Part shown: piece by piece, positions 276-50,500 of the stretch
Numbering within the stretch: the stretch's first letter is position 1
Layout of the letters: each line of letters starts with the position of its first letter
Source of the DNA: Macrostomum lignano
Lineage: Eukaryota
Direction of reading: 5' to 3'
NCBI GenBank assembly: GCA_002269645.1
Contig: NIVC01001062.1
Location: forward strand, 304,647 to 368,646
Length of the DNA stretch: 64,000 bases
Translations under genes and position numbers: made by a program
Notes under the pieces: model-generated
Databases searched by the model: none
Seen by the model: the letters and a program-made list of their open reading frames with translations, nothing else
What the model was told of the DNA's origin: nothing

Positions 276-794
276 AGGGAAAAGAAAATAACTAAAAGGA
301 AAGACTGAGAAAAATACAAGCCAATTGGTTTATGCATTTATTGAACTAATACGCGGACCGATGGTTATGTTTGAAACTAGAAGGTTTTGCAACTAACTAA
401 TAAAAATACAAGAAAGGTATTAAAATGCTTAACACTGCTACAGTTTAAATAGTAAAGCACACATATTTATTTACTGTAATTTTATTCAGCTAACAAATAC
501 ATGATTTTTTATGACAATACAGATTGTAACCGGATTAAAAGCCCTAAAATAGGGGCCTAGTCTTATAACGCGACAAAATGCAACGCAAACACACATGCAG
601 TTGGACAAATTAAATAACTTAAAGAGGAAATTAAATGAAACAACTACTTCAAGTAGTTTCATTATTTACGTTAAATATTAGCTTCCAGAATCGATGGATT
701 AAAATGAAATTAGTGCCCAATTTAAATAACTTTCAAAAAATAGAATACAAACTTAACCTAATTGAAAACAAATAACAGTGAGTTACAAATTTTT

Positions 795-1430: not shown

Positions 1431-1457
1431 CAACCAACAAAAACTTTAGGAATATTT

Positions 1458-12250
<10,793 letters not shown>

Positions 12251-26185: not shown

Positions 26186-28130
26186 ATGACATCATACAAG
26201 GTAAATTACTCAATACTGTTCTTTTCTTACCCTATGTGTTAGATTAAAATGATATACATGGTGTACTAATGAAACATTCTGTCATTGTTTTCGATTGATT
26301 TATTTAGCTTCGTAGAGCAGCGTCTACAACTAAAACTACAAATGTTATATTTCGCTGAAATTCTCTTTAGGCTTAGGCAATATTAAAATAAGTTTTAACT
26401 TCATCATTTTATGTGGTTATGTTATGTGCGTTCGAACTTGAATCGAAGGCATGGTCATAAATGTAAATGACCTAGCATTGTAACAAAACCATCAACTGCA
26501 GCTTAATACTTGCATACAGATTTTACTGCTTTGCAGAATTTTTAGGTAGAAGTCACTGTATATCGGTACAATAGGCCTTCTCAGCTCAGCTGTATTTACT
26601 TATACAAGTAGATGCAATTCAATTGTGGGGTACCCAACTTGTTTTTACAAAATTCTTAAAAATGGCTTTTGATTTTAAGACCTAAAAGTAAAAATTAGCT
26701 TTTTACTCATTTTTTTTTATTTTGAAAAGCTCCAAAACGCTCTAAATAGTTTAAAAGTCTTAGCTTGTAAAGAAATATTTTATATAAACCATTTACTTTG
26801 TAAAATGAACTTAAATAGTTGATTTCAATGCAATTTTCTCATTTATAGGCTGCTGATTCCAAGCGCGAGGAGTTTCGCAAGTACCTGGAGAAGGCTGGCG
26901 TGTTGGATGCTTTGACTAAGGGTGAGATTAATTTTTTATTTTGCCAAATACTATGCTTAAAATTAGAGATTGATGTTTTTGCAAATCGAAATTTTTATTT
27001 TTAAAGTTCTTGTCGGCCTGTACGAAGAGCCGGAGAAGCCTAACAATGCGTTGGAATTTCTCAAGCTGCACCTGGGCACCGCTGGCCCAGATGCGCCAGA
27101 CGTTGAAGCCATGAAGGTGGAGATCACCGAGCTGCGGACACGGAAAGAACAGCTGGAGGCTGAGAACCAAGAGCTTCGAGGGCGAGTGAGTAGCTTTCAG
27201 TACATCCGCTCCAATCTTCTTAAGCTTCCATTTGTAGATTGGATTCCAATCAATCTTCTTTGAGTAGATCGGATTCCAATCAATCTTCTTTGAGTAGATC
27301 GGATTCCAATCATTCTTCTTTGAGTACATCAGCTCCCAATCAATCCTCTTTGAGTAGATCGGCTTCCAATCAATCGTCCTTGAGTAGATCGGCTTCCAAG
27401 TTCAATTTTCTTTGAGTAGATCGGCTTCCAATCAATATTCTTTGAGTAGACCGGCTTGCAATCAATCTTCTTTGAGTAGATCGGCTTCCAATCAATCGTC
27501 CTTGAGTAGATTAGTTTCCAATCAATTTTCTTTGAGTAGATCGGCTTCCAATCAATCTTCTTTGAGTAGATCGGCTTCCAATCAATCTTCTTTGAGTAGA
27601 TCGGCTTCCAATCAATCGTCCTTGAGTAGATCGGCTTCCAAGTTCAATTTTCTTTGAGTAGATCGGCTTCCAATCAATATTCTTTGAGTAGACCGGCTTG
27701 CAATCAATCTTCTTTGAGTAGATCGGCTTCCAATCAATCGTCCTTGAGTAGATTAGTTTCCAATCAATTTTCTTTGAGTAGATCGGCTTCCAATCAATTT
27801 TCTTTGAGTAGATCGGCTTCCAATCAATCTTCTTTGAGTAGATCGGCTTCCAATCAATATTCTTTGAGTAGACCGGCTTGCAATCAATCTTCTTTGAGTA
27901 GATCGGCTTCCAATCAATCTTCTTTGAGTAGATCGGCTTCCAATCAATCTTCTTTAAGCCGACCAGTCTCCAAAAATCTTATTTCAATGAGAACAACCCT
28001 ATTTATAATTCTCATTTTAAATCATTTTCTCTTCCCCTAGTTGAAGAAGCAGAAATTTATAGCTCTTTATATATCTTTTATTCAGCTGCAACAGTATGAA
28101 GCGGCCCCGGCAGAGGCGGCAGAGGAGTAA
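26186..28130 (+). CDS. MYCBP: c-Myc-binding protein (MYCBP/AMY-1); exons 26186-26200, 26849-26921, 27007-27185, 28086-28130; 103 aa
   Basis: Spliced translation MTSYK|AADSKREEFRKYLEKAGVLDALTK|VLVGLYEEPEKPNNALEFLKLHLG...ENQELRGR|LQQYEAAPAEAAEE* matches recalled MYCBP in sequence and length. GT-AG introns with consistent phases. Confidence 0.93.
27200..27960. repeat. 30-bp minisatellite TTTGAGTAGATCGGCTTCCAATCAATCTTC in MYCBP intron 3
   Basis: About 24 copies starting ~15 bp after the donor. A higher-order block (~27390-27630) is re-duplicated at ~27630-27870. Confidence 0.95.
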
Positions 28131-29550: not shown

Positions 29551-30480
29551 ATGGCCAGCAAGATTTTCTCCACTGCTGCGACTCTAGTTGACAAGAAGAG
29601 TGGCAAGAAGCAGCAGCAGCAAAACAAGAAGCCCGAGCAACCGATGCCGCAGCCTCAGCCCCTGAAGCCTACCGAACCTGCCGAGAGCCTCGACGTCAAG
29701 AAGACCGACATTGTCAAGCCAGTCGAAGACAATCCAGTCGGTCGACTTCAAGAACTCTGCCAGCACCGACTGTGGCTGCTGCCCTCCTACACGTTCGAGT
29801 GTAGCAACGTCGACAATCCGAGCAAGCGCCAGTTCACCTGCACCGTGAAGCTTCAGGGTCACACCGACAGAGGCGTTGGACGCTCCAAGCAACTGGCTAA
29901 GCGAGCCTGCGCCCAGGCCATGCTGCAACAGTTGGCAGCCTGCACGGAAGCAAACTGCTGCCAGTCCGCCCTGGCTGAGATCAAAAAAAGCACCGCCGGA
30001 GACGGCAACAACAAGAAGAAGGTAGCGGCGGCTGCGTCAGCTCAGCAGAAGCCGGCAACTCCGCCGCCAAGTCCGCTGGACGAGGCCGCATTCCAAGAGT
30101 TGCGCTCGTCCAAGCGACTTCAGTCGGCTGCTCGCGCTGGCGCCGAAGTCAATGGACTGTTCCGCGGAGTGAGAAACCGCAAGGCCGGCGTAACGCTGCC
30201 GCCTCTGGAGACGCCAACAGCCGGTCCCAGCAGCGCCAGCGAGCAGCTGACGGAGCTGAGCAAGCAGCACCGATTCGGGGTGCAGTTCCTTGACAACGGC
30301 TCCGACAACAGCAGCGGACAATACCGAGCCGTTGTCAAATTATCCACTATGCCGACTATCGTTGCTGTTAGCAACGGAGCAAGCGTCGCCAACGCCAAGG
30401 AACAGGCTTGCCGAGCCGCCATAGAGTACCTGTGCTCTTTGACGCGAGAAACTACGGGACCCGCCGGCAAGAAAGCCTAG
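29551..30480 (+). CDS. Intronless dsRNA-binding protein of the TRBP/PACT/Loquacious family (one canonical dsRBD plus C-terminal type-B dsRBD)
   Basis: NPVGRLQELCQHRLWLLPSYTF...FTCTVKLQGHTDRGVGRSKQLAKRACAQAML is a dsRBD with a KxxAK motif. EQLTELSKQHRFGVQFLD...SGQYRAVVKLSTMPTIVAVSNGASVANAKEQACRAAIEYL resembles TRBP/Loqs dsRBD3. AATAAA at ~30520. Confidence 0.85.
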   Translation: MASKIFSTAATLVDKKSGKKQQQQNKKPEQPMPQPQPLKPTEPAESLDVKKTDIVKPVEDNPVGRLQELCQHRLWLLPSYTFECSNVDNPSKRQFTCTVKLQGHTDRGVGRSKQLAKRACAQAMLQQLAACTEANCCQSALAEIKKSTAGDGNNKKKVAAAASAQQKPATPPPSPLDEAAFQELRSSKRLQSAARAGAEVNGLFRGVRNRKAGVTLPPLETPTAGPSSASEQLTELSKQHRFGVQFLDNGSDNSSGQYRAVVKLSTMPTIVAVSNGASVANAKEQACRAAIEYLCSLTRETTGPAGKKA

Positions 30481-33600: not shown

Positions 33601-33879
33601 TAGGGAACATTGGCTAAAAAGCCTTGCAACTTCGCAACATGTCTGCCGCATCTGTGAGGCTCCGCATCCGGCCAATCAGCACCAGCACAACAATGGCTCG
33701 GGTCCAAAAAACTGATTGACACCGCCTCGCCTTCCGCCTCACCTGCTGCCTTGCCTGCTCCGTCTTTAACCTCGCCTCCAAACTCGCATACAGCTTCATT
33801 CTTATCCATCTCGCCTTATCCGTCATCGGCTATTGCCGCGCCTGGTAGTGCCATAGCGGCCGCCAAATCGCCTAACCCG

Positions 33880-34025
33880 CCAGCCCAGCCGCCAGCTCAG
33901 CAGCCAGCCAAGCCGCCAGCCCAGCCGCCAGCCCAGCCGCCAACCCAGCCGCCAGCCCAGCCGCCAGCCCAGCCGCCAGGCCAGCCGCCAGCCCAGCCGC
34001 CAGCTCAACCACCAGCCCAGTCACC
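33880..34025 (+). repeat. 12-bp CAGCCGCCAGCC repeat (QPPA)n within the DIRS/Ngaro ORF
   Basis: About 11 copies read directly. Confidence 0.9.
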
Positions 34026-35557
34026 GGCCTCGACCTGGTCGCTTTCGCCATCAGCTTGGGAGCCTGTTCTAGCCAACGATCCGGATGCGGAGTTTCTCCG
34101 TTTTGGCTTGCGCCATGGATTCCTCATCGTCAACAAGCCAGCCCAATCAGCCTCCGAAGTCAGCAATTACGAATCCGCTCTTTCTGAGGACACCTACCAG
34201 CTGGTTGAGTCCCAGATCAGAGAAGAACTTGAGACTGGCCGCTATGTGCGCGCATCAGAGCTGGGCATAGGTGTCTCCGTCAAAGTCAGCCCACTTGGAG
34301 CCATCAAGAAGAGCAACGGAGGAATCCGCCTAATCCACGATGCATCTGTGCCCGCCGGAGACAGCATCAACGACTGCTACACAGAGCGTCAAAGAATGCG
34401 GTTTGCAAGCGTCGATGACCTGACGCGGCGCCTGAAGCGCAACTGGTTCATGAGCAACATTGACCTCAGCCAGGCCTATCGTAGCGTGCGCATTCACCCG
34501 GACTGCTATCAGCTGACAGGCATCAAGTGGCACTTCGCGGGTGATCCGCATTCGCCTTACTTGGTGGACACCAGACTGCCGTTCGGTGCATCAGCGTCGG
34601 TCAACATTTTTTAAATCAGTTCGAAACTGCGCGACCCCACAAGCAGGTAGTCGTTGTCTATCTGGATGACTTCTGCGTGGCTGCCGAGACCTTTGAGAGT
34701 TGCTTAGAAGCTCACAACTTGCTGTTGGATTTGCTTCCCTCGCTGGGATTCTGCATCAATTGGGAAAAGACCAGCCCACCTGCCACGTGCATCACGTTTC
34801 TGGGAGTGCGAATCGACAGCACATCCAGTCTGCTGTCCCTGCCGCAGAGCAAGACTGATGAGCTGTGGATGTTGCTACGTGATTGTCAGAGCGCTAAGAG
34901 TTTGTCAAAGCTTCAGCTCCAAAAGCTGGTGGGCAAGATCGGCTGGTTTTGCAAGGTGGCTCGTCCCGCTCGAGTCTTCCTGCAAACTCTCATTGACGTC
35001 ACCAATGCCATCAACGGGCGTTATCGTCTGATTCCCGTGGCGGGCGAGCTCCGTGCGCAGCTGGACTGGTGGCTGCAGGCGCTGCCCGCCTTTCCATGAG
35101 ACCGGCTGTAGGTGCGGTGTGGGTGTGGGTGTAGTTTGCTAAAGCTAGCCATATACGTATACGAGCGTGTAATCTCCGTTTAAAGTATTAATTAAGCTCA
35201 GAGCAGCTGAAGCGTACAAGGCCGGCCGGTCGGAAGAAAAAGACGAAAATATGCTTTTTCTATTTCCACGACCACGCAATTGCTTTCTTTGCTAACGACG
35301 TACAGACTGTTGCTTCGATTAAATACTGATTATATAAAACGAAATTTGATAGTCGCTAGGAGTAAAAATTAAGATTGAAATATTAAATATAGATAAGCTA
35401 GGTATCAAAAGCAATAAAAAGAAAAAAAGTTTTTGGACGGCAACAAGGCCAAAATACTCGAAAAACAGATCCACGCAGGATAAAAACAAAGTTCTAGGTA
35501 AAATGTTTCTTGTTTTTTTCAAGCTCTCGATTTTCTCGACACTTCTTGATTAATCAC

Positions 35558-38500
35558 TCATTTTGGATTGCGATCCAGTCTCGCATTCACACTCAGGTGG
35601 GCATGAGCACGGTCCCATGTGCGCAGCGCAGCATTGTGCCTATTCAGCAGGGATTCCACCGAGTTCAGCCTCATTTCCACCAGGTCAATGGATGCATCGA
35701 ACGCGACTGAAATGACGACAACATTACTCAGTATCAAAACTAACCAGTGCTAAACAGCCCCAAGGTCAACTCACCGTCAGAATCCACATACGACTCGTGT
35801 GTCTCCTGCGCTCTATTCCAGAAGGTGTTCTTGAATCGCTGCAGGATGAATTCCACAATCTGGAAGTCGCGCACTTCGGCGACCTCGCAGTTCTTGGCCA
35901 TCTCGTAGCTTTCATTCAGGACGCTGATGAAGAAGTTGACGATGACGAACGTAAGAAAGGAGACGTAGATCGAGAAGGCTATCTTCGGTAAAAGTCCGTG
36001 GTGAGTGACCGTCTGTATGTCGAACTTGCCCAGCATCGCAGTGAACAAGGTGGACATTGCGCCAGCTGGTGAGTTGAACTGCTGCTGCACTGAGCCAAGC
36101 AGCAGATTCATGAGCAGGCTGAAGGCAACGAAGATCACACAGAAGACGATGCTGAAGGAGCGCATCTGGCTTAGAGAGAGGCGAAGTGTAGCAAGCAGGT
36201 GACTGAGGTTGGTGCTGAACCTGACGAGACCCAGCAGAGACAGCTGAAGCATGAAGGTGCCGGCGCCAAGGCAGTAGTAAAAGTACTGGTTCAGCAGCAG
36301 CAGAGCCCGTAGCTGAGGTCTGCCGCCGTTCACAGCAGCTTCGAGAGTGGCCCCAGTGTTGGCAGTCCGGACTCCGTAGATGATTGCGGTCGCAGTCATG
36401 CTCAGCGCAACGCCAACGTCCAACCAGTTCTCGAAGCTGTTCCAGAAATCTCGAAACTTCCGCAACCGCAAAAGAAGCAGGACCAGCCGAATGAGGACGA
36501 TGATGCCAGTCAGAATCTCTGAGACCAAAGCGAAGACTCCCATGGCACCGATGTACCGATAGAGACGAGTGCTCAGCAGCTGCTGGCTCACCAGAGCTCC
36601 ACCAAACGGTTGCAGCTCAACAGCCAGGGTGACAGAAGTGAACAGGTTAATGTCGGAGTACAGCAGGTCCAAGTCGATGGCCACAAAGCGAGTGTGTCGA
36701 TCCAGCCAGCTCAGGCTCTTCAGCTCATCGATCAGAGCTCGGCTTTGCTCAAGGCTGTCGGGCAGCAGGATCGAGAAGCCACCTCCGCGGTACTCAGCCA
36801 GCCGTCCCGAGTATCCGGCACCGTCGACACGGTTCATGAAGGCTTGGGCAAGAAGCTCGCCATCCGTGAGGTTGCACGGCGTCAGCTCTGTCCAGCCGGG
36901 AGCAAAGCAGCGCGTCTCGTCTTCGTCCCTGTCGCTGACGAGCCCGACGCTGACCGGCTTGCGACGCCGCCGCAGCTGCCGCACGGAGACGCGGCTCAGC
37001 CGATAGCCGCAGCCGTCAGAGATGAGCTTGGATCCGGACTTCGGGAACACGGATGGCAGAAAGCTGTCGTTGAGTGCGCTGTACATTTGATCGACAGTGT
37101 TCGACACAGACTCAATATCAGCATATTTCAAGTGGTTCAGAACGCTCTCGTGCAGCTGGAAAGTCATCGGGTCCAGATTGGTGTAGCAGATGCAGTACTG
37201 CAGGAACAGCAGCAGAATGGCAAGACAGGCGTTCACGGAGCTGCTGATGGCCTCTTTTCTCAGGGGATCCTTCTTGGCCTCGGACTGCAGCTCGTGCAGG
37301 TAGGCGACGCCCTCTGTGGGAGTTTGAAGTCGCACAAGCCATGCAAACGTTTCTGCGCCATGACTAATGTATGCAGAGCATCGCGAATAAATTTAATGAA
37401 TTAAAGGATCAATCAAAACATACATACCCTTTCGAACTACTTTATTGTAGTGAGAGACTCGAACCAACGGAGTATGCTCAAAATCGTAGTCCTTTCGAAA
37501 GATGACGACAAGGATGAACCCAATAACAATTACCTGCAAGTACATTAAGTAGTAATTTAGTTCTACGGTGTCCAATAACAAATGACACCGATCTAGATAG
37601 CTCGTACTAGAGTAAGGTTGTACCGAAATATAAAGTATATAAATGTTTTACTATGTGGATGTACCTTTTTTAAATAGTTTATTGTAGTAGGACACTCGAA
37701 CCAACGGAGTGTTGTCAACATCGTAGTCCTTCCGAAAAAATACAATCATAGCGAATCCAATGATTGCTATCTGCAAACAAACAGTTCGGCGTTAAATGAT
37801 GAATTTCAAAAATTCAGAGGTACCCATAAAATGCATGGAATCAATAAAGCAATTTTTACTTTCAGTGGCTGAACAAACAGTGCTGCTTCAAAGAACGACA
37901 ACGCAAAGGACAGCAGCCACTGCTGCGACTTCTCCTGCCCCCACTGCATCGCGTAGAACACCAGAAACACGCCAGCGCCAACCATGCTGCCGAGAACCAA
38001 AGCCCAGCCGATGTACTGGCACCAGTACGGCAAGGTGAATCGCTTTGGGTGCGAACCGGAACCCTTCTTCACCAGCGGTGTGTTGGCGGGATTCTCTGTG
38101 TAGTTGTTCGCTCGTCCGCTCAATTCCTTGGATGTTCGAAACACTTGCATAGTCTGAAACATTTGGGTAATCCATTAGGTTTGTCTAAAAAAACGGAATG
38201 ACTCTTTAAGTGTCTGACCTCATCATTAAAGTGCTCAGTAGCCAGTGCATCATCAGTATTTTCTTCAATATGCGAAAGAATAACGTCGGAGGGCTCGTCT
38301 TTCTCTGGCTCCGGCTTTCGCTCCGACTTTAGAAAGAATATTGTAACCACAGCAGAAACGGGAATGACTACGAGGCCTCCCATGATGGAGGTGAAGAGAG
38401 TGTTGATTGACAGCTTGATGGGCCCGATGGAGATCGTGTCAGAAGCAGCCTGGCTCTCTTCACCTACGCCGTAGAACATGGCGTTGGCAATCATGGTCAT

Positions 38501-41500
38501 GAACAGCAGGCAGAAGCACACCCCGAAGCGCTGCAGGCGGCTGAAGTTTGTGTCCGTATCGCGCTTGAAGACGGACATCCACAGGTGGTCGTCTTGAAAT
38601 TTGCGCTGCAAGTTGAGCTTCACAAAGCGAGGCTGGAACGCCAGAAGCTCCTTGGTCGCCAGTTTCAGAATCACCGGCGGATCGAAGCCGACAATCGGCT
38701 CCGAGTTGACAAACACGTACCTGGCAATCATGAGCAAACAGTTACGGGCTTCATCGCTGTTTTTCGGATTGCTAAACATTTGACTACTCACGTGGCATTG
38801 TACAGCTGGTCTGTGATGACAATCTTTCTCAGCGTCCATGGAAACACTGGGCGGGTGCCTTCCAGAGTAACACTAAGCTGCATGATGTCGCCCAGATGCT
38901 TTGCGGTTGTCATGGTAAAGTGATCGATGTCTCCTGATCGGAGGTTCTAACATAAACAAAAAATGTGTTAAGAATTCGTTTTTTCCACAGCACTATTTCA
39001 ACAGAATCCAACACGATTCCAATACAATTTTGCTCACCTCGCGAACTCCATCGGAGAGGATCCTGCAGGCTTCTAGGTGGTTTCTTCCGACAATGCTCAA
39101 CAACGGAGTTCCCGTTGTGCTGCAGCCCTCGTACTTGTCGGTGTACACATCCATCAGGTAGCGGAACTGCCGCTGACAGTCGTCAACGAGCGGCAAGTGT
39201 TTGAACTGAAAAATCAAATCGAAAGTCAATCACTTAAGCGAGACAAACAGCGAAACGAAGACTCAACTCACCTTCTCCAAGTCTTTCTTGTCAACGTGGC
39301 GAAGCCACACGGCTATGGGAATGAAGATGATCCACAGCGTGACGACTGTAGCAACCACAGCCGCGCTGTCAGCCAGTTTGCCCTGCCAGTTCTCGAACAG
39401 TGTCCCGAAGTCAATAAGATTCGGCAGAACATTCAGTCCGACACCGAAGCTGCCAAACAAGTTGCTGACGAATCGAGGCTTGCTGGCAACAGAGCTGGGC
39501 TCAGGCCGGCACACATCCTCAGATGGTGTGATCCAGACGTCAAGGCTTGAGTCCCACATGCTGCAGACATACAGAGATAGACCGAACTCGTAGGACAAGA
39601 CTGGGTCTGGGCACGAGGCGGCTGTCACATCTCCGCTGGCGTCTCGATCGCAATCTGCTCGACCCACGGCAATGAAGTAGCTCTCGTTTACCGCTGCCGG
39701 CAGGTAGAAAGAGCCCTGACTCACATTCAGCATGCTGTCGGTGGGTGTTGGCAGGCGTCCGAGCTGCACAGATACCTTCAAGTTCTGCTTTTGGTTTAGT
39801 GGCAAGACCGTCACCTGCAGCAGCCCACTTGTCACATTGACGCTATGATAGAACCTCAGCCAGCGATCTGTGGGAGTCGCATTCACCACTATTCTGGGTC
39901 CTGTTGTAGCAGGAAGAGAGAACTCAAAAAAATCCGTGGTGTCGATGGCTCTTCTAGTCCGACAGCCCTGCTTTCCAATCATAAGAACAGGTGAGCTGAC
40001 ACTGTTTTCGTTCTGCCAGAGATAAGGACTCGGTCGAGAGAACAGAACCTTCACTGACTCGCAGCCAGCAGTGCTGGGCAAGACTACTTCTCCAAAGTTG
40101 GATTGGAAGGTGACGTTCTCAGTCCCACTGCCGTTCAATTTGAGACCTTGAGCTGATAGCGAGTCGTCTGATATTGAGTACGTACTTGACGAGTTTAGCA
40201 GAGTGTCAGTGACGCTATCGATGGCTGCAAGGACCGTCTCCGTTACTCGCTTTACTTTGCTCTGAGCTTCCGTATCATTGTGACTGGATCCGTTCACTGA
40301 CGCAGCAGAAGAGTTCACGGTGCTTTCTGAGGCTACCCAGATGTTTGATCCGGTCGAAACGATGTCTGAAATCGGCGAAAAGTCGAGGAAACGTCATCTG
40401 TTTTGAGTGCAAGCTCTTAAACGAAAATGTCATGCGAGTCTTACCTGGTCCGAGAAAGATCACTGAGTCAGCCTGGATTTTTTCGCCGATGCGGCCAAAG
40501 CTTTGGCTGATTTCTGATAGCTTCTCGGCTGCACTCTCCTGAGTGGGAATAGCAAAAAGTAAGCAATGTTCTGATTACAATTTGTACCATTAGAGCTGCT
40601 GTTTGGTTACCTGAGACTCGACTGTGACCTGATTGATTCTGTCTACAGGGATCGCGTTTTTCAAAGCATAATTCACTTGCTCAAGATCTTCAGGTGTGTC
40701 CACAGAGAAATTAGAAATTATTGAAATCATATTTGCTCTTAGCTGGAAAGAAGTGGCAGTGGAAAGTAATAGTTTTAATGCGGAACATACATTTCAAGGA
40801 ATCAGTTTATTTATGCACAATTTTATGCGATGTCGCACCTCAGTCATTTTGTTGTGAAAAACTGCAGTCTTCTCAGATGTAGCATTTGACCCCTCGGCGT
40901 CCTCGTTCCTAGCGTTCATCACGGATGCCAGGCACACGATGGTGGTGGCAGCCGCCTGCTGGTTTCCACTTCGCAAATGCTTCTCCAAGTCGTCGTTGGA
41001 TCCATCGAAAATTGCGGTCAAGTTTTCAAGCAATACGCTCGCGGGGATCGGAGGTGGATAAACCTATCAAGGGATTAACGACGCCAAAAATTATTGTCAA
41101 AATCCATTATAAGCTACTTGAGTATGGTTTACAGCATCGTCACTTACAAATACGTCAAATACAAAGGCGATCTTATCTCCGATGCTGTCAATAACGTTGA
41201 TGTAAGCGTCAGACCTGAATCCATGCGAGCCAGAGCCAACAGGCAGTAAAACTGGCGGTGAAATGGCTGCTGGTCCATAAAACAACAGAATGGTTCGCCG
41301 AGTTCCCTTTGGTCGAATTCGATATTCGTAGGTGAGTTTATTGGAGGTGACGTTGAACTCCTGCCAGCCCCAGCATGAGATCTGATATTCGGTGATCATC
41401 GCGTAGCCAAATTTCGGCTCGATTGTGCAGTTGCCTCCACTGGCCGGCTTGTTAACAACCAAGATTTTTCCCACTGTGACCGGACCGTCCTGTCCGATGC

Positions 41501-44500
41501 TGGATGCAGACACTTGGATGAGGTACGCCACACCCAGGGTCATTGTGTTGGCTTTTCGAATCAGAGTGTTGTTGGTGAAACCTAAGCAAGAACGGATTTA
41601 GTTTTAGGTTTAAATTTTTCCTTATTCTAAGAACGACGATTCTGTCACAATTTACCCGACTCTGCAACGAGTTCCAGATCGTCAAAATGACTGGCCGTCA
41701 GCTGCTTCATTGCCCAGTCATAGGAAAGGCCCGAAAACTTGGTCCCACAGTGGGCTACGCAGTCTGCCTGGTAGACCAAAGGCGTTGAAGCGCTCACTTT
41801 CTCGGCACAGTTGCTCACGCATCTAAAAAGCAAATCCAGCGCAAGCCAGCAGCAATCAACTTTGGTTTCATTGGTAGGCACCTTGGGTGGCCTTGGGAGT
41901 TCCCTGTCAGCCACACCCTTCCGCTTGTCCTCCAGTGTGCACCATACCCTACTCCCGGTACGTACATCTTAATGTCGGTTTAAATTTGGGAAAAACCGAT
42001 CGGCCAAATTTATACTCGTATACACAGAAGTGCTGAGATATCGAGGCTTACTGGGGAAATTGCTGAGATATTGAGGCTTACTGGGGCATTGCTGAGATGC
42101 CAAGGCTTACTGAGGGAATCGATGAGATCTCAAGGCTTACGGGGGAATTGCAAATATGTCAAGGCTTGGAGGGTTGCAATGATGTTAAGGCAAATAGGAT
42201 ACACATTAGTAATTTTTGTCCCTTGGCTGCCCCAAAGGGAGGCCCAAAATTGCTAGTCAATCAACTTTGATCAATAGTGCTGCTTTATTGCAACACGATT
42301 AAGAAGTAATTTTATAGGCTTTACTCGACCAATAGAGCACTGAACTTACGAAACGCTTAACGATGCTTGTTTTTGAGGCCTGACAAAAATGGTCCAGTTA
42401 GCATTGGCTGTACGCCCGTCCTTGGTCAAAAGTGTTCGAACAATGTAGGTGCAGTTTGGAAGTATGTGAAAAGTGTCAAGAACCGCTGTGGCTAATTCCT
42501 TCTGTTCCATGAAGATTCCAATGCCGTTGCCAAAGCAGCCGGAATACATTTCAAGACCTTGGCTCACAGGAATGCTAATCCGAGTTGCGACATTGTCAGG
42601 AAGTGACGGCAGCTCCGCCTCCTGCAGGCAAATCCAGCGAAACGCCATGCCCGTCAGATTCCCATCCTCAACGTCCCAGTCCCGAGGCGACAGCTCCAGC
42701 ATGACAGTTTCGTTGTAGGCAGCGGAGGCCGGTGTTGACGCATTGTTGAAGCTCAGCGTCAGAGGCGTCTTCGTGATTTTGAGGTAAAACACGAACTCTG
42801 CAGACACTGGAGGCGTCACAGCAAACATGGATAGGTTGAGTACAACCTTGTACAGACCGTACCAGAGTGTGCGGTTCGGCACCTGCAGCAGAAACGAGTT
42901 ACCGAGACTCAGGCTGACTTCAGCTCCGGCTGCATTCAGAACTCTCCAGCGCCAATACGTGTTGCTTGTCTTCGTGCAGTTCAGCTCTGGAAGACCCTCT
43001 ACGACGATCTCCTGGGACCTCATCAGCTGCAGAGGCCTCTCGGGATCCCACTGGGTCAGAATCCGACCAGCATGAGAAAAGTTCAGCTTTGGTTTGTCGC
43101 ACATCCAGTCGAGTATAATTGCGAGAGTTTCGGCCGTGTCGTTGCTGACGTGGTTGAATGCTAGCAGAGAAGCCGAAAAGCCACCAAGACTTGGATAAAC
43201 GTGAGAAAACGAAAAAAACGTGTTGTTGTAACAAATTTCAGTAAAATTGATACCACGAGTAGCAGAGTAGGGCTGACACAAAAATGGAATGCCAAAGCTG
43301 ATCGATGTAGAGTCTCCAAAATCTACGACAAAACAGCTGTTTGTGCCGAATCTGGTGATATTTAAGAAGAAGAAAGTCGCGTTCGATAAGAAGGCCGAAC
43401 CGTTCGTTTTGAAGCTTCCGACTATGACAGCATCGAGCACAATGTCTACAGAGATCGGAAGCGTTTGGAAGGAGACGAGGTTGGAGCAGTTCAGACTGAA
43501 GTTTTGCAATCCCAAGGCAGCTCTGGGAAACGAGTGAGACAAGGCAACGTCCGCACTGAACCCAATCGTGTCGGCGTAGATATAGCTGGAGCCAAATATG
43601 TCCCAACTGAACACGCAATGCACATTACTCAGCGACAGCAGGAAATTCGACAGTCGAAAGTGCACCTCAGCAGGTGTGTACAACACGCTAGAGTTGTACT
43701 CCAGTGTCAGACCTCGAACTCTCTCTTGTACCACCACAAGACCGAGCGGCACCGACTTGTTGCTGACGTCATTCCATACGAACACTCGCGCGGTGAAGTT
43801 GCCGACACTTGGAAACTGCAGCTCAACAGTGCCCAGGTGTCCCAAAGCTGCTATGCGGCCGTCACCGAAGTTGATGCCCACCCGCAGAGCAGATCCGGTA
43901 ACTACCGAGACTGTGAAGTTTCCAGCTTCCGCTTTGACCAGGACCGTGGGACCGGTGAATGTTAGACCACTCACTGCCTCCTGACAACGCACTGTTACAT
44001 TCCGAGCATGCAGAATGGACACCAAATTCCAGCAGGTTACTTGCACTGGCTCCGGTCCTTGAAGGAGACTCCTTGAACACGCGAGCGGCAGCTGAGTTGA
44101 CACTTCTGATATCGAGAGTTGTGTTGCTATGCTTCCGAACACGAAGCTGCAAGTTGCATTTGTTGGTAGTGGCTCAGGGTGACTCAGTGTGGCGCTCACG
44201 TTTGTGACAGACAGCTCCAGGAATGTCGGGGCTTGCACAGTCAGTGACTGGACTGGATTCTGAACTAAAATACCGAGCGTCACGGTCTCAGATCGAGTGT
44301 GATAGTTGGCGGCGAATGCGGTCAGTTGGTAATAGCCTGGTCTGTGGAAGCTCATGTTGAAAACATCTGCAGCTGCCCAGGCAAACAGATGCTGATCTTC
44401 TAAATGTACCGAGCTGCCATTTCCAAAGTCTAGCTGATATGTCACGTGACTACCGGTGTCAACAGAGAAAGTGAGCGAGAAGCTGTGGTTTGTAGCAACG

Positions 44501-47500
44501 ACAGAATCGCTTGTGCTGAAGTGAAAGTTTGTCACGTTCTCCTGCAGAATCCCATAGAAAGAGGCGGTGTGAACGGACAGGCGGTTCCAACAGGTGACAT
44601 TCGCCACTGCGAATGACGCATCGAGTGGGAAAATAATTAATTCGTCGTAGCTAACAGTTGGCCGAAGAGTCGTTGTGATGTTAAGCTGCTGGACTCCAGG
44701 CTGCAACACGGCAGTGCAGAAGATCGGCAGATTTGACACTGCAGTGCCGCGCATCATGTCAAGGCGAAGAGTAGCGTTGAGTGGCGCTGCTGTGGGAACG
44801 TAAACCAGAAGCAGCCTGAGATAGTCGACGAGTTGAGGCGCGACCTCCACAGCTCCGAAGGATTTCCAGTCCCCCGTGCCATTGCCGATCGTGCATTGAA
44901 AGTCAAACAGGCCGACGTCTTCTCCAAATGAAAAAGGAAAGTTCAGTAGAGTGAGCAAGAAAGTTGCTTGTGTGTCCAGCGGCTACCCAGTTCCAGTGCT
45001 GCTTTTGTCCGTTACTGAAGTTGGCAACCAACTGCAGACCTGAGCCTTGATGCCACGATGCAGTCACTTTAAATGTCTCATTGAGTGACAGCAAAGACTT
45101 GGACACTTCGCATGTGGCATTGAGAAGCGGAACTTCAGAGCAGGACAGATTTTCAATGATTGAGGCGCAACCAATGTTGTTGGATAGGTCGCTTTCCGTA
45201 TAAGACGGCCCATAGCTCTCATTGAAAACTGCACACAAACGGGTAATGTCGGGACAGCTTGATGCAGAGACATTGAAGATGTAGCTGCAATTTACGATAC
45301 TGAAATTCGAGAGGCCCTGACGCAGTTGGCCTGGCTGACAGAATGCGGTCTTTGGCATCTCAATCGCATTCAGAGAAAAGCCGGATGTCAAAAACGCAAC
45401 CGGCTCAAAATTTGTTCGTGGTGGTGGAACTTCAGCTACTGGCAGTCCAAGGCTTAGATGCAGTAAGTATGTGACAGTCAGGTGCACTGGGTAGCGATGG
45501 ACCCATGTGCTGTTGCTGACTCTATAGATCACGCTGAGCAGCTCTGTGTCTGTATTCGGACTGCAGTTTCGCGGCAGTTCTGTACACGCTGCGCCGTTCT
45601 CTGGCGAAGCCATGACGAAACTGCCCTTCGGCCCTACAGATGCTCGAGTGCAGACATAGGGAAAAAGTTCGCAAGTGGCCAAGTCAAGATTTGTCTGCGC
45701 ACTCAGCGTGAAGCCAGCGGCCTCGCCAGGATGCACAGAATCTCCAGATGTCAGGTTGGCAGGTAAACTCAAATTTAGCATTAAGCATGAGGAGGAAATG
45801 CAGCTGGTGTTCAAGCTACAGTTGCTGCGGCAGAGAAATAGGACTGGTTCCAGCTGTGGAAGTGAGATCATAATTTTTAATAATTTAAATAATTTATAAT
45901 ATCCCACAAAAGTATGAAATTTATCTCTTACTTGAAAGTTTGCATCCGGCAGGGTCACCGCGGCCACGTGAAGGGGACTGGATGGGCTGAGGATGAGCAC
46001 TGACTCAAAAATCAGAAACTCCTGAGTTGATCGAGTAATCACCGGAGGGCTTATCAGATGAAGTGATGCTGAGACATTCAACTCAGGCTGGCACAGCTTG
46101 TTGAAAGAGACGCAGACTTCGTTGTTGTCCAGCTGGTAGTCGACAAACTCGGAGAAGCTGCCCGGTGCTGCGGACACGCAGACGTTTGAGATCTGGTGGC
46201 AGATGCTTCCGGCAGGCAGCTTTAGTGTTGCTGTGCACAAAACATCGAATGTTTCTCCAAGATAGCGTGCAGCACTGAGGTTTCCGCTGACAGCGATCGC
46301 TGAGCTGGCGGTGGAGTTCAAGTCGCTGACTGATGAATTAAAGCGGGCGGTGAGGTCGAAGTTCGTCATCGGAGACGGAGCGGCCGTCAAGCTTGTGGTG
46401 GCGTTGAGAACACGAATTCTGAAGCTGAACGTCAGGTTGGTCGCGATGTCCCGAACTACTGTCTGGGTAGAGACCAAACTCAGTGAGTTGACTTCGGTGT
46501 CCATCACTGGAAAAGAAAATGAGGTTATGAATCACGCATTCTATCACTTGTAACGAAGCAAAAGCATGCAGCAATTTGTCCTGAGCCACTTACAAAGTTT
46601 GCACAAAGCTTTCCGCATCACGTAGCCAGACTTGCACAAGCACGTCGTATTCAACGGTTCTCCGGGTGACAGACACACCGTGTACTTTGCCAGAGTGCAG
46701 CTTGCATCCGCGAAGCAAGCATCGTTAATATTTTTAGCTGGAAAAAATCGAGATTAGTTGTAGCTCCTTCGATAATTGAACAAGTTAGGGTAGCAAAAAT
46801 CAGACTTACGTAAGTGATAGTAGGATTTTTGAATGATTCTCATTTGAACCTGAGCCCCTGACGCGCTGCTCAACGACCATCTGATGGAGTCGGATCGGTT
46901 TGAGCCGGCGCTCCCTGTGAGCTTCGTGGCGGGACAGTCGCTGCTGAACCACCAGCCGCTGCCACCAGCAGTTGCGCACATCTTTGCGGTGCCGAAGTCG
47001 AACGTAGAGAAGGTCGACATGTTCTGAGCTTCGAACAGCTGCCCGTCACCGAAGTCGGAGGTACAGTCTTCCAACCGGAGCTGAAAGTCCAGAAACGACG
47101 GTGCCACTTTGACCTCCCGGCACTCCACATATCGAAAGCTTCCGTCGGAGATCCACGCGTCGATCCGCATGGAGAAGTTGACCATGAGTGTCAGATCGCT
47201 GAGTGACTGCAGCCCGATCCAAACGAGGTTGTCCATCTCGAAGCCAGCCTGATACTGAGCTATAGAGAAGTTCATCGAGCTGTTCAGGTTGAAGTTTTGA
47301 TAAATGATCATCCAGTCGTGGTAGCAGTTGATTTTCTTGCTGTCAATGGCGGTCTCACTGCGACCCACGCATGTCGGTACTGGGAAAAGCATGTTCAAAT
47401 TTAGTTAGCACTTTCCCACTTCTGACACAAAGCAGTTTTGTAAAATATAATGACTAATATATATGCAGACAACTCACCCTGCAGCACGCTTTCAAATAGT

Positions 47501-50500
47501 TTAAATTTAAAACTCAAATCGCTCCGGTAACTTGCAGGCATAATCTTGGCCTGCTGAGTAACCACTATTGTGCGGGACTGAAGTATCACAACCTGGTTCA
47601 GCAGATGCCGTTTGTTTACTGAGAGTCCTGAAGTCTGAAACCGATAAAATTCATTCATAAATTCATCCGGTTACTCTCAAGGAAAATGCAGCTTTTAGCT
47701 TACCTGGTTCTCATTGAGCACAAATGTTGCAGGAAACCAAGTCATGGTCTCACCGTCGAAGTACAACAACAGGATAGAGTTGTATGCGAGGGGCTCTCCG
47801 TCTACGCGTTTCAGGTTGTTTCCGGCACCAGAGAAGCCTAATCCGGTGATTCTGACTTGTCTCGACATTGTCACCTGACGGTAGGTCATGATGGCTTTCT
47901 ATCTATCTCTATTAACAGTCTATCTTGCAGACAAAAAAACGGTCAATTACAAGTACCATTATGTAATATCCGTTGAAACACTCCGAAGGTGACAAAGCTG
48001 GAGACGACAAGAGCGAATCAGCTGCAGTTCCGTTTGTAGCGTTGGCTGTGAAAGTAACACTGACGTTCGATGTTTCAGACATCAAGTTCTGCCAGGTATC
48101 CACTGAAACAATTTATATTATCAACTGCAAATAAATGATCATATCTACTGCACATGTCAAGACTCAAAATACGAAAGCGAAGTGACTCACGACGACAGAC
48201 TTGCTCCACGAAGTGAGTGCCGATTCGCAATACTGCTTGGAAACTGATTGACAGAGTGTCCACATCCAGCCCTGTGAAGCTCTCGTGGGAAACCTCCAGG
48301 CTCCTGCACCCTCCATCCTGGCACTTCACCAGCGCACTCTGAATGCTGTCCACTTGTAAGGACTGGCGGGTGTCGGAGACAATTGAGTAATTGTAGAAGA
48401 CATTGTAGAACGGGTTGGAGCAGCTCAGATGTTGCAGAACATCTGCAATTAATCAAGTCAAGGATCTGACCCAGCTTCAATGACAGTCTCTGCATCAACC
48501 TAGATCAAGAATCTGACCCAGCTCCAATAACAGTCTCTGCATCAACCCAGATCAAGAATCTGAGCCAGTTCCATCTGACCCAGCTCCAATGCTTCAATGA
48601 GTCTTTGCATCAACCTAGATCAAGTCGGTCGTCTCACCGGCCTCAGTCTGGCACAGGATGTGGCCTCTGAAGGAGCCGCAGTCAACTGCAGTCCAGGCCT
48701 CTTCAGTCAGCCTGGTGGCAGCGCAGGCGCCCGCCGCCGAGGGCTCCCCGATGCTCCAGTGCGCCCAGGCTCCCAGGCTGCTGTTGGTCGCCTCAGACAG
48801 CCACTGGCCGCTGCTGGAGTTGAGCACTGCGCCAACATGAAACCTGAGGTCGCTGGGCTGCGAGCTGAAGCCGCTGCGGGTGCACAGAGTTGGACGAGTT
48901 TGTCAGTGAGAGGATGGCATAGTGCTGGGTTAAAGCAATGCGAGCGATTCTGGCATACAGCGAGTGATCGATGAAGGCCAGCTTCAGAGCGGTGTAGTCA
49001 GCGTATGAAGTAGGCAGGAAGAGTCCGCCAGGCCGGTCCCAGTTGAGGCTGCCGCAGTAAGCCTTCGCCACTTCGCGCGCGACTCCCGGAGTTCCGTCCG
49101 CAAAGTGGTGGCGGCAGCGGCCTTCGAAGTAGTAGAAGTTCACAGGGCAATCTGTAGAATGGCGCATGTTTGATTGAAATCTTGTGAATAAATGACAGGT
49201 AAAAAGATTTAAAACTGTGGCTTACCTCCCGATGGACAGCCGTATAAAGTGTTGATGGCCAAATTATGTATCTCAGATGCGTTTCCCAGTATCTTTCCGC
49301 TCTTGGCAATAAAAGTTTGATTCAGCCAAATACGGTTGATTACGCGAAAAGTCTAAAAACATCGTTAATAGTGAAGATTGTTTAAATAATCAAGTATAGC
49401 GAGTATCTAGTATCTATCGGATTAATGGAATGGCTACATACCAAAGTGCTGTCGCTTCCATTGACAGACAATTGAAGAGCAGCCTCCGAAACTGTGAGAT
49501 GAGCGCTTACAGTTAGGTTAGTGAGGTAATGTTTTCTGCAGCTCGAATTCAAGAACAAGCAAATCGGTTGCAGAAGCGAATGTAGTATTGAAAGCAGTCG
49601 AAGATAAAGTTGGACATTCTGAAAGCAAGAGGACACTCACTGTTTAAATTTAGCTTACGGAGATTCACCCAATTAGCCATTAGCACAAACTCACGGAGAT
49701 CACTCAATTTATAGCTACTATCAGTGAAACTGCACTTACCTACAGGAAACCCGACGACTCCAACTGTCAGTAGAGCGTCTCCATAGAAACTGACAGGTGT
49801 CAGGACCAGGAACTTTGCCACTACAAAATCCGGCAGATCTTCCACAAAACTCACATTGGAAATGACTGAACCCAGCAATTCTTTGTCTGGAATGCCTGCC
49901 CTGGGCACTTCCTGAAGCTGGGAGTCGTCATGAGTTCCATAGTGCAGTCTGTACTGATTCAAACAAGATCCATTGATCCCGGGAGTAACAATGGAAAACA
50001 CTTGATGAGAACCGGGAATGTGATGCGGACGGAGGCATTCACAGGTAGCTCAAAGGCTGAGCCACTACTCAGCAGCAGGGCGGCAGGCCCGCGTTCCCAG
50101 CTCGCACTGGAGGGCCGGCGCACCGTGACCTGGTGCGGCGCCACCGGCACGAAAGGCGCCTCAGGCAGCGACTCGGGAGAGCAGCCGAACAGCTCAAACT
50201 TTCCGGCAAACCGGCCAACCACTCGCAGTGGGTAGATGCGGAAATGGCGGCCGATGACAGGGTTGGGTAGTTGCTCGATCGAGGTTATGCAGCTGTTTGG
50301 GTAGTCCGCAGGTCCGTGCAGAACCTGCATGATAGGTGATGAATGAGCCTGTTGTCATAGCTCAGTAATAACTGAAGTATTCAATGAATGCTAGTAGTCC
50401 ACTTTCACAACACTTACGGACGGCGCCAAGCCCCAGAATGTTCCGCTACGAGAGTACATCAGTACATAAGTGACTGCTGCCTCCCTTGCGAGTCCAGTTA

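What the first reader, a model, noticed from the sequence alone, without database searches (positions are those of the whole stretch)
37428..37770. Tandem duplicated 106-nt exons: predicted mutually exclusive splicing in a polycystin-1-like channel
Two paralogous exons have identical length and phase (0 to 1), intact splice sites and open frames, and share FRKDYD..TPLVRVS.YNK. The upstream exon ends in phase 0 (QPLK|) and the downstream exon starts in phase 1 (E GVAYL). Exactly one copy restores the frame; including both or neither frameshifts the whole TOP/channel region. They encode the end of TM5 and the start of the cytoplasmic loop, so two channel isoforms are predicted. Retained frame and sites despite divergence argue for selection on both. 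I do not recall mutually exclusive exons being described here in PKD1-family genes.
Basis: partly seen in the sequence, partly recalled or inferred. Interest (0 to 1): 0.75.

Follow-up and report, generated by a model that had tools for sequence, protein, structure and literature searches.

The report
Twin alternative exons, flatworm polycystin-like gene
A polycystin-1-like channel gene of the flatworm Macrostomum lignano carries two tandem 106-base copies of one small exon, of which exactly one must be used to keep the reading frame; this is a common way for channel genes to make two variants, but use of both copies in RNA is still unproven.

Summary
On the minus strand, exon A (37770-37665) and exon B (37533-37428) are both 106 nt. 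They are 72% identical in DNA and 60% in protein, have GT-AG sites, and are open only in the shared frame. They lie between a phase-0 exon end (QPLK, 37860, not 37866) and a phase-1 exon start (37313). Using both or neither gives an early TGA.

The window is Macrostomum lignano (GCA_002269645.1, NIVC01001062.1). The gene is PKD1/REJ-like. The exons encode the last ~11 residues of TM5 plus the linker to S1.

Both copies look constrained:
- dN/dS is 0.25.
- Differences by codon position are 13/3/14.
- The TM half keeps 12/12 hydrophobic residues despite 47% nucleotide divergence.
- The flanking introns cannot be aligned.

UniProt fragment models join A to the last exon (one model) or B to it (four models), but these may be ab initio predictions. 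No transcript data could be reached. No RNA-structure, steric or U12 mechanism was found; only frame incompatibility enforces exclusivity.

An M. lignano paralogue and scallop PKD1L2 each carry a single copy. Verdict: a probable, unproven mutually exclusive exon pair, which is a new member of a well-known kind.

The parts
37860..38153 (-). Upstream constitutive exon (e2), 294 nt, phase 0 to 0. It encodes TM4 and the first part of TM5 (...LPYWCQYIGW...WLLSFALSFFEAALFVQPLK).
   Evidence: acceptor tgtttcag|ACTATG at 38153, donor CTGAAA|gtaaaa after 37860. It aligns to human PKD1 LLPAWC...EPLK.
37771..37859 (-). Intron 1 (89 nt, GT-AG). Its 3' ~50 nt (37820-37771, core 37796-37776) resemble the 3' end of exon e2.
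   Evidence: for the intron. (repeat D2) and for the remnant: 17/21 identical with 0/2000 shuffles reaching this, and local alignment p=0.004.
37665..37770 (-). Exon A, 106 nt, phase 0 to 1: IAIIGFAMIVFFRKDYDVDNTPLVRVSYYNKLFKK(+G).
   Evidence: UniProt fragment A0A1I8FT24 (P0002) starts here and joins it directly to the last exon, at 100% identity.
37534..37664 (-). Intron 2 between exons A and B (131 nt, GT-AG). It is long enough to be spliced out.
   Evidence: For comparison, introns of the paralogue are 79-432 nt and the e3-e2 intron of this gene is 65 nt.
37428..37533 (-). Exon B, 106 nt, phase 0 to 1: VIVIGFILVVIFRKDYDFEHTPLVRVSHYNKVVRK(+G). It is the copy closer to the family consensus.
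   Evidence: B-type exons are joined to the last exon in UniProt fragments P0005, P0004, P0003 and P0001. B scores a mean 3.1 bits better than A against 146 homologues.
37314..37427 (-). Intron 3 (114 nt, GT-AG).
35740..37313 (-). Last exon (1574 nt including the TAG stop), starting in phase 1. It encodes the pre-S1 linker, S1, the polycystin/TOP domain and the S2-S6 channel domain.
   Evidence: Pfam Polycystin_dom and PKD_channel; PDB sequence and fold matches to PKD2, PKD2L1, PKD1 and PKD1L3.
38219..38839 (-). Exon e3 (5' limit not determined). It encodes TM2 and TM3 of the PKD1-like N-terminal TM bundle.
   Evidence: It aligns to PKD1 in 6a70_B.

Best explanation
The two exons form a mutually exclusive pair made by a lineage-specific tandem duplication of an ancient small exon of a PKD1L2-like polycystin-1-family gene in Macrostomum lignano.

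Each mRNA must carry exactly one copy. e2-A-last and e2-B-last both give a full 11-TM-type protein. e2-A-B-last and e2-last shift the frame into an early TGA and would give a truncated product, a likely target for nonsense-mediated decay.

The two isoforms differ at 14 of 35 residues. Seven are conservative hydrophobic swaps in the cytoplasmic end of TM5. Seven lie in the juxtamembrane start of the TM5-S1 linker (V/F, D/E, N/H, Y/H, L/V, F/V, K/R). The expected effect is to tune helix packing or the lipid or partner interface next to the voltage-sensor-like domain, not to change the fold.

Shown here: the anatomy, the frame logic, the constraint on both copies, the protein location, and the absence of the duplication in two homologous genes. 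Inferred: that both exons are really spliced in, that the choice is regulated, that NMD removes the aberrant forms, and any functional difference between the isoforms.
For: Geometry and frame:
- Equal 106-nt length, phases 0 to 1, GT-AG sites and a single open frame in each copy. One copy restores the frame; both or neither give a TGA.

Constraint on both copies:
- dS 0.97, dN 0.25, ratio 0.25.
- Differences by codon position are 13/3/14 of 35.
- The TM half differs at 17/36 nt, yet all 12 residues stay hydrophobic in both copies. P is about 0.001-0.002 under random substitution.
- A model in which one copy has been neutral since the duplication gives the observed ratio plus an intact ORF in at most 1.5% of simulations.
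- Similarity stops at the exon borders. The flanking introns are not alignable (p = 0.5-0.96), while the exons score 48 against 4.1 +/- 1.9.
- Both copies keep the subfamily motif IG...RKDYD....(V/I)RV shared with M. lignano paralogues P0057, P0011 and P0027.
- dS near 1 is far larger than the 5-12% divergence of the homeologous contig, so the pair predates the genome duplication and has been kept since.

Database models:
- P0002 is A joined to the last exon at 100% identity to the window. P0005 has the same extent with B joined to the last exon. P0003, P0001 and P0004 carry B-type exons from other copies.

Exon unit and copy number:
- A 106-nt phase 0-to-1 exon follows QPLK| in a metagenomic relative (L004). 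Pecten PKD1L2 has a 130-nt phase 0-to-1 exon at the same place, in single copy.
- The M. lignano paralogue Mlig000160g1 has a single TM5 segment.

Location:
- The exon covers residues 306-340 of the modelled fragment. These are the end of helix 280-316 and then a low-confidence linker before the S1 helix 344-386.

General knowledge:
- Tandem-duplicated exon substitutions are enriched in ion channels and transmembrane proteins (PMC9741552). Frame incompatibility with NMD is a recognised way of enforcing exclusivity (PMC5740500).
Against: - No transcript or junction evidence was obtainable.
- The gene is not among the transcript-derived GenBank gene calls in the part of the locus I could see. 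This suggests low expression or filtering.
- The UniProt fragment models may be ab initio. A predictor would skip one exon simply to keep the frame, so they are not independent proof. Four of the five use B.
- Exon A is the less canonical copy, and I could not check whether it is conserved in the homeologue. Locus L002 ends about 250 nt short of the gene.
- No regulatory mechanism was found. There is no significant RNA structure (z = -0.25), inverted repeats are at chance level, the 131-nt intron between the exons is not sterically limiting, and there are no U12-type sites.
- Divergence is uneven: 47% in the TM half against 19% in the loop half (p = 0.003). Partial gene conversion from the used exon could inflate the apparent constraint on the other copy in the loop half.
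Confidence: 0.6

Rival explanations
1. Exon B is the constitutive exon. Exon A is an unused or barely used duplicate, either a decaying or only recently silenced pseudo-exon or an exon in the making, so in practice a single isoform exists.
For: B is closer to the family consensus: V follows QPLK in 75 of 99 homologues against I in 17, and B scores a mean 3.1 bits better. B-type exons are present in four of five UniProt fragments, including more diverged copies of the locus. Exon A is abutted by a non-coding remnant of exon e2, which suggests an odd secondary origin. The low synonymous divergence in the loop half could reflect gene conversion and not selection on A.
Against: A keeps its ORF, both splice sites, exact length, second-codon-position conservation (3/35 differences) and an all-hydrophobic TM half despite 47% nucleotide divergence there, a region where conversion cannot be invoked. 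Neutral evolution of one copy since the duplication fits in at most 1.5% of simulations. One database model uses A. A recent loss of use cannot be excluded.
Confidence: 0.2
2. Exon A, the copy nearer to e2, is the exon actually used, and exon B is the silent relic.
For: P0002 joins A to the last exon and is 100% identical to this locus. In this window exon B carries F18, where all other copies and exon A have V.
Against: B is 33-34/35 identical across at least three other M. lignano copies, as conserved as the rest of the protein, which is about 91% identical. B is the more canonical sequence and shows the same constraint signatures.
Confidence: 0.06
3. Both exons are spliced, but the main role of the pair is quantitative. 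Double inclusion or double skipping produces frameshifted, NMD-targeted transcripts that tune expression (unproductive splicing), so the pair does not serve to make two functionally distinct channels.
For: Both non-productive patterns are sterically possible: intron 2 is 131 nt and all sites are consensus-like. Both lead to premature TGA codons. Nothing in the sequence prevents them.
Against: Protein-level constraint on both copies is not needed for a purely regulatory role. This reading is also compatible with the main explanation and does not exclude it.
Confidence: 0.1
4. The duplication is an assembly artefact or collapsed heterozygosity in the redundant Mlig_3_7 assembly.
For: The assembly is known to be redundant and polyploid (PMC5730564).
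Against: The copies are only 72% identical and are separated by unique intron sequence. A- and B-type sequences also occur in independently produced UniProt models. Assembly errors do not produce anciently diverged, in-frame paralogues.
Confidence: 0.01

Closest known systems
Mutually exclusive, tandem-duplicated exons in voltage-gated cation channels (for example SCN exon 5a/5b; CaV and Slo clusters in human and Drosophila)
   Same: Adjacent homologous exons of the same length and phase encode part of a transmembrane helix plus the adjoining loop of a 6-TM-type channel domain protein. The isoforms differ by a handful of mostly conservative residues. This class is enriched in ion channels (PMC9741552, PMC12772994).
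   Different: In those cases both exons are documented in RNA, are often conserved across phyla, and sometimes have known intronic regulatory elements. Here usage is unproven, the duplication appears lineage-specific (absent from a paralogue and from scallop PKD1L2), and the segment lies in the N-terminal TM1-TM5 bundle and not in the voltage-sensor or pore domain.
Frame-enforced mutually exclusive exons (exon lengths not divisible by three, with double inclusion or skipping removed by NMD; described across human MXE clusters in PMC5740500)
   Same: 106 nt is not a multiple of 3. Including both exons or neither gives premature stop codons. No steric or splice-site incompatibility is present.
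   Different: NMD of the aberrant forms has not been shown in this species for this gene. The TGA in the A+B form lies 50 nt from the last junction, and the TGA in the skip-both form is in the last exon, so NMD efficiency is uncertain.
PKD1L2-type polycystin-1-like proteins (for example Pecten maximus XP_033737386.1; M. lignano PAA69298.1)
   Same: They share REJ and PKD domains, the TM4-TM5 LPxWC...QPLKV signature, the polycystin/TOP domain and the PKD channel domain. The phase-0 intron at QPLK| and the following small phase 0-to-1 exon are shared with the scallop gene.
   Different: Those genes carry a single copy of the TM5 exon or segment. The M. lignano paralogue has also lost the intron at QPLK|.
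Docking-site/selector RNA-pairing control of mutually exclusive exons (Dscam1, 14-3-3xi, ATE1)
   Same: Only the outcome would be the same, namely one exon chosen out of a cluster.
   Different: No significant competing RNA structure was found here. Folding gives z = -0.25, and the best intron-exon complementarities (13 nt at 85%, 9 nt at 100%) are at the level expected by chance.

Membership tests
Polycystin-1-like (PKD1/PKD1L/REJ) 11-TM proteins | REJ domain and PKD (Ig-like) repeats in the ectodomain | tested here: met
   Pfam REJ E = 3e-13 and 6.9e-17; PKD E = 2.9e-19, on upstream minus-strand ORFs.
Polycystin-1-like (PKD1/PKD1L/REJ) 11-TM proteins | GPS motif before TM1 | tested here: inconclusive
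   No Pfam hit. By eye there is a C..W......W.....C pattern ending ...RFVSNLFGSFG before the first TM, but without the canonical HL(T/S) site.
Polycystin-1-like (PKD1/PKD1L/REJ) 11-TM proteins | PLAT domain in the first cytoplasmic loop | tested here: inconclusive
   On my rough splice of two exons, Pfam PLAT gives E = 0.014 and 16.5 bits, below the 23-bit cut-off.
Polycystin-1-like (PKD1/PKD1L/REJ) 11-TM proteins | TM2-TM5 bundle with the LPxWC...(Q/E)PLKV signature | tested here: met
   Aligns to human PKD1 chains 6a70_B and 8z6b_A and to 146 family representatives. AlphaFold helices at 252-278 and 280-316.
Polycystin-1-like (PKD1/PKD1L/REJ) 11-TM proteins | C-terminal polycystin/TOP domain plus a 6-TM PKD channel domain | tested here: met
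   Pfam Polycystin_dom 1.6e-22 and PKD_channel 1e-14. PDB phmmer hit to PKD2L1 at 8e-36. Foldseek TM-score up to 0.80 on the target, E = 8.5e-23.
Mutually exclusive exon cluster from tandem exon duplication | Neighbouring exons that are homologous, of equal or similar length, and in the same phase | tested here: met
   106/106 nt, phase 0 to 1, 72% nt and 60% aa identity.
Mutually exclusive exon cluster from tandem exon duplication | Intact splice sites and an open frame in every copy | tested here: met
   GT-AG sites resembling those of 12 transcript-supported introns of the paralogue. Each copy has one open frame.
Mutually exclusive exon cluster from tandem exon duplication | A reason why the exons cannot be combined (frame, sterics, splice-site type or RNA structure) | tested here: met
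   Frame only: both or neither gives a premature TGA. Steric (131-nt intron), U12-type and RNA-pairing mechanisms were looked for and not found.
Mutually exclusive exon cluster from tandem exon duplication | RNA evidence that each exon is joined to both flanking exons while bridging the other | not testable with these tools
   No M. lignano transcript data could be reached. Only UniProt fragment models of unknown evidence type show the A-to-last and B-to-last joins. The upstream joins e2-to-A and e2-to-B are not covered by any model.
Mutually exclusive exon cluster from tandem exon duplication | Purifying selection on, or conservation of, every copy | tested here: met
   Within the genome: omega 0.25, codon-position pattern 13/3/14, retained hydrophobicity P about 0.001-0.002, and the neutral-copy model fitting in at most 1.5% of simulations. 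Conservation of exon A across copies or species was not testable. B is conserved in other copies.

The most novel reading that the evidence does not exclude
This would be the first mutually exclusive exon pair described in a polycystin-1-family gene. It would give two channel or receptor isoforms that differ in the cytoplasmic end of TM5 and the juxtamembrane TM5-S1 linker, possibly with cell-type-specific use in flatworm ciliated sensory cells.

In addition, exon A may have been created from a spliced template, through reverse transcription or a complex rearrangement. About 50 nt of the upstream exon's 3' end lie fused directly in front of exon A, although the intron at that junction is ancient (it is shared with scallop).
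Probability: 0.45. Interest if true: 0.45.

Novelty: new member of a known kind. Interest (0 to 1): 0.3.

Why it matters
Tandem-duplicated, mutually exclusive exons are among the few alternative-splicing events with consistently demonstrable protein-level function, and they are concentrated in ion channels. I found no report of one in the PKD1 family.

If both isoforms are expressed, the variable 35 residues would point to a functionally tunable spot in polycystin-1-like proteins: the TM5 end and the linker to the voltage-sensor-like domain. This region is poorly resolved and little studied, and M. lignano is an animal in which RNAi and transgenesis are available.

The finding also flags a large PKD1-like gene that the transcript-based GenBank annotation of Mlig_3_7 does not call, at least in the part of the locus I could see. 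That matters for anyone cataloguing flatworm sensory channels.

The significance is modest otherwise. The mechanism is textbook, the event looks lineage-specific, and expression is unverified.

Tried and rejected
1. Transcript evidence. Three word-indexed protein searches and one exhaustive search returned only UniRef fragment models for this gene. No Logan or ENA transcript-derived proteins were found. Exact look-ups of P0001, P0002, P0006 and P0044 had no contig on record.

2. Homeologue DNA. I reached the syntenic contig NIVC01003091.1 through the neighbouring TARBP2 gene. The 10-kb flank ends about 250 nt before the PKD1-like stop codon, so exon A could not be examined there.

3. Relative from a metagenome (L004). 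It has the same intron and a 106-nt exon, but the contig ends 58 nt after the donor, so a second copy cannot be seen.

4. RNA-structure control. The whole-region fold has z = -0.25. The inverted repeats found (for example intron 1 AAUUGCUUUAUUG with the 3' end of exon B; the e2 end with the intron 3 end) are at chance frequency. There were no Rfam hits. Rejected as evidence.

5. Steric and U12 explanations. Intron 2 is 131 nt, with branch-point-like motifs near its 3' end, and the donors are U2-type. Rejected.

6. The idea that intron 1 is a decayed third exon copy. The 5' part of intron 1 is not similar to A or B (p = 0.32 and 0.64). Rejected.

7. The idea that the e2 remnant reflects an intron-less ancestor. 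The paralogue lacks the intron, but scallop PKD1L2 and the metagenomic relative both have it. The intron is therefore ancient and this idea is unlikely.

8. A test for cDNA-like continuation of exon A into last-exon sequence was not significant (p = 0.11).

9. The Wasik et al. 2015 genome paper, which would give the annotation method behind the UniProt models, is not in the held library.

10. A prokaryotic promoter/terminator scan is irrelevant to this eukaryotic locus.
Full report
**What is there**

The feature lies on the minus strand. I re-read 37200-38000 and extracted the two proposed exons.
- Exon A (37770-37665) and exon B (37533-37428) are both exactly 106 nt.
- Exon A has acceptor ...ctgtttgtttgcag| and donor AAG|gtacat. 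Exon B has acceptor ...atgtacttgcag| and donor AGG|gtatgt.
- Each exon is open in only one frame, the same one for both. The translations are IAIIGFAMIVFFRKDYDVDNTPLVRVSYYNKLFKK and VIVIGFILVVIFRKDYDFEHTPLVRVSHYNKVVRK.
- Identity is 76/106 nt and 21/35 residues, with 30/35 positives.
- The repeat finder independently reports one 115-nt direct repeat at 74% identity with 237-nt spacing.
- An alignment of the exons scores 48, against 4.1 +/- 1.9 for shuffles.
- tblastn finds no third copy in the 64-kb window.

The upstream exon (e2, 38153-37860) ends ...CAG CCA CTG AAA|gtaaaa in phase 0.

With either A or B spliced in, the frame runs open to the TAG at 35742-35740. With both exons there is a TGA at 37480-37478, and with neither there is a TGA at 37262-37260.

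**Whose gene it is**

A UniRef fragment (A0A1I8FT24) matches at 100% identity. The neighbouring single-exon TARBP2 gene places the window on Macrostomum lignano assembly GCA_002269645.1, contig NIVC01001062.1. The fetched locus is base-for-base identical to the window, and the window end coincides with the contig end.

The minus-strand gene is polycystin-1-like:
- Pfam finds PKD and REJ domains on the upstream ORFs, and Polycystin_dom and PKD_channel on the last exon.
- PDB sequence searches hit PKD2, PKD2L1, PKD1 and PKD1L3.
- An AlphaFold model built with 36 homologues (mean pLDDT 74) matches polycystin cryo-EM structures, with Foldseek E = 8.5e-23 and target TM-score up to 0.80.
- PLAT (E = 0.014) and GPS (no hit) remain inconclusive on my rough splicing of those exons.
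- The transcript-based GenBank annotation calls no gene here, at least up to window position 40480.

**Where the exons sit in the protein**

Exon e2 aligns to the human PKD1 segment LLPAWC...WLLSSSASFLASFLGWEPLKV, which is TM4-TM5. In the model, TM5 is one helix spanning residues 280-316 of the modelled fragment. The alternative exon covers residues 306-340. That is the last ~11 helical residues plus ~24 residues of a low-confidence linker that leads to the S1 helix at 344-386. The cytoplasmic side is inferred from the established PKD1 topology.

**Are both copies under selection?**

- Nei-Gojobori estimates give dS 0.97, dN 0.25 and a ratio of 0.25.
- Differences fall 13/3/14 on codon positions 1/2/3.
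- In the TM half, 17 of 36 nt differ, yet all 12 residues remain hydrophobic in both copies. Random substitution at that density achieves this in 0.1-0.2% of trials.
- I simulated one copy evolving neutrally since the duplication. The observed pN/pS together with an intact ORF is reproduced in at most 1.5% of runs. Both copies constrained at omega 0.15-0.25 fits well.
- Similarity ends at the exon borders. The flanking introns cannot be aligned (p = 0.5-0.96).
- Both copies keep the subfamily motif IG...RKDYD....(V/I)RV seen in the nearest M. lignano paralogues.
- dS near 1 is far above the 5-12% divergence between this locus and its homeologous contig. The pair therefore predates the genome duplication and has been retained since.

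Two caveats apply. Divergence is uneven, at 47% in the TM half against 19% in the loop half (p = 0.003), so partial gene conversion could mimic constraint in the loop half. A recent loss of use also cannot be excluded.

**Independent models**

Five UniProt fragments from the earlier M. lignano annotation cover this junction.
- P0002 starts at exon A and joins it directly to the last exon, at 100% identity to the window.
- P0005 has the same extent but starts with exon B, with V instead of F at residue 18.
- P0004, P0003 and P0001 carry B-type exons from further copies, two of which are about 91% identical overall.

So both 3' joins exist in a public annotation, and B is 33-34/35 identical across copies. 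I could not find out whether these models rest on transcripts, because the relevant paper is not held. A gene predictor would skip one exon just to keep the frame. I count this as weak support.

**History of the exon**

- An exhaustive family search found 4065 relatives. Exon B matches them slightly better than exon A does, by a mean of 3.1 bits. V follows QPLK in 75 of 99 relatives and I in 17.
- The transcript-annotated M. lignano paralogue PAA69298.1 has a single TM5 segment and no intron at QPLK|V. It keeps the phase-1 intron after the segment.
- A metagenomic relative (53% identity) has the QPLK| intron followed by a 106-nt phase 0-to-1 exon. The contig ends before a second copy could be seen.
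- Scallop PKD1L2 has the same phase-0 intron and a single 130-nt phase 0-to-1 exon.

The small exon is therefore ancient, and its duplication is specific to this flatworm gene lineage.

**How exclusivity would work**

- Intron 2 is 131 nt. Introns of 65-432 nt are spliced in this gene family, so steric hindrance is not the reason.
- The donors are U2-type.
- The region does not fold better than shuffles (z = -0.25). The best intron-exon complementarities are at chance level, and Rfam finds nothing.

The only mechanism visible in the sequence is frame incompatibility, presumably with NMD of the aberrant forms. This is a recognised class of mutually exclusive exons (PMC5740500). Any regulated choice would depend on trans-acting factors that cannot be read from one sequence.

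**Comparison with what is known, and novelty**

Mutually exclusive use of tandem-duplicated exons is well known and is enriched in ion channels and TM proteins (PMC9741552; SCN genes, PMC12772994). Full-text searches for such exons together with polycystin or PKD1L found nothing relevant. The two human catalogues do not mention PKD genes in their main text.

I therefore rate this as a new member of a known kind. It is plausible (about 0.6) but unproven, and of modest interest (0.3).

**Unexplained**

The last ~50 nt of intron 1, directly abutting exon A, are homologous to the 3' end of exon e2. The core is 17/21 identical with 0/2000 shuffles reaching this, and the local alignment gives p = 0.004. 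Exon B has nothing comparable upstream.

The intron at this junction is ancient. The arrangement therefore suggests that exon A was copied from a template in which e2 and the TM5 exon were already joined, either a spliced RNA or a complex rearrangement. A test for continuation into last-exon sequence was not significant (p = 0.11).

Noticed in passing
window 37771-37820 (core 37776-37796), minus strand: The 3' ~50 nt of intron 1, directly in front of exon A, are homologous to the 3' end of the upstream exon e2 (37872-37892; F E A A L F V). The core is 17/21 identical with 0/2000 shuffles reaching this, and local alignment gives p = 0.004. The remnant is out of frame and contains a stop. Exon B has no such remnant. 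Because the intron at QPLK| is ancient, this hints that exon A was copied from a spliced or rearranged template.
   Followed up: partly
window 37428-37533 versus 37665-37770: Divergence between the two exons is uneven: 17/36 nt differ in the TM half and 13/70 in the loop half (Fisher p = 0.003). The loop half has runs of 12-17 identical nucleotides, including at synonymous sites. The cause could be partial gene conversion or a nucleotide-level constraint such as splicing enhancers.
   Followed up: partly
window 37480-37482 (exon B codon 18): Exon B in this window has TTT (Phe) where every other M. lignano B-type copy in UniProt, and exon A, have Val. This is a derived, locus-specific substitution or an allele.
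   Followed up: no
window 35740 to about 50330, minus strand: A large PKD1/REJ-like gene is not among the GenBank gene calls for this contig in the part I could see (up to 40480). Upstream same-strand ORFs carry a fibrinogen C-terminal domain (46754-47398, Pfam E = 7e-11) and what look by eye like C-type-lectin-like sequences (48615-49167; Pfam found no domain there). They may belong to the same ectodomain.
   Followed up: partly
L003 (NIVC01001334.1, paralogue BOX15_Mlig000160g1) 9258-9665: The M. lignano paralogue (38% identity) encodes TM4, QPLK and the TM5 end in one exon, so it has lost the phase-0 intron that scallop PKD1L2 (L005, about 44105-44289) and a metagenomic relative (L004, 1483-1556) share with this gene.
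   Followed up: yes
window 29551-30480 (+): A single-exon dsRBD gene (TARBP2, 97% identical to ALD16269.1) lies 5 kb downstream of the 3' end of the PKD1-like gene. A truncated 186-aa copy is annotated on the homeologous contig NIVC01003091.1 (L002), which is syntenic at 82-95% nucleotide identity.
   Followed up: partly
window 33751-35099 (+), including the 12-nt repeat at 33877-34020: Reverse-transcriptase/pol-like ORFs preceded by a (PAQP)n-coding 12-nt tandem repeat lie between TARBP2 and the PKD1-like gene. The same element sits at the same place on the homeologous contig, so the insertion predates the genome duplication.
   Followed up: no
window 1-11800 and 27234-27955: There are dense satellite-like tandem arrays: a 22-nt unit x105 (3690-6027), a 22-nt unit x45 (9110-10092), (TGTC)n and (TATC)n tracts (6992-7781, 10618-11161), a 102-nt unit x5 (898-1431) and a 30-nt unit x24 (27234-27955). 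The strong GC/AT skews at 4-8 kb come from these arrays.
   Followed up: no
window about 39330-39420, minus strand (before TM1): The GPS-like segment reads ...CSMWDSSLDVWITPSEDVCRPEPSSVASKPRFVSNLFGSFG, without the canonical HL(T/S) autoproteolysis triad and with no Pfam GPS hit. This protein may not be cleaved at a GPS site.
   Followed up: no
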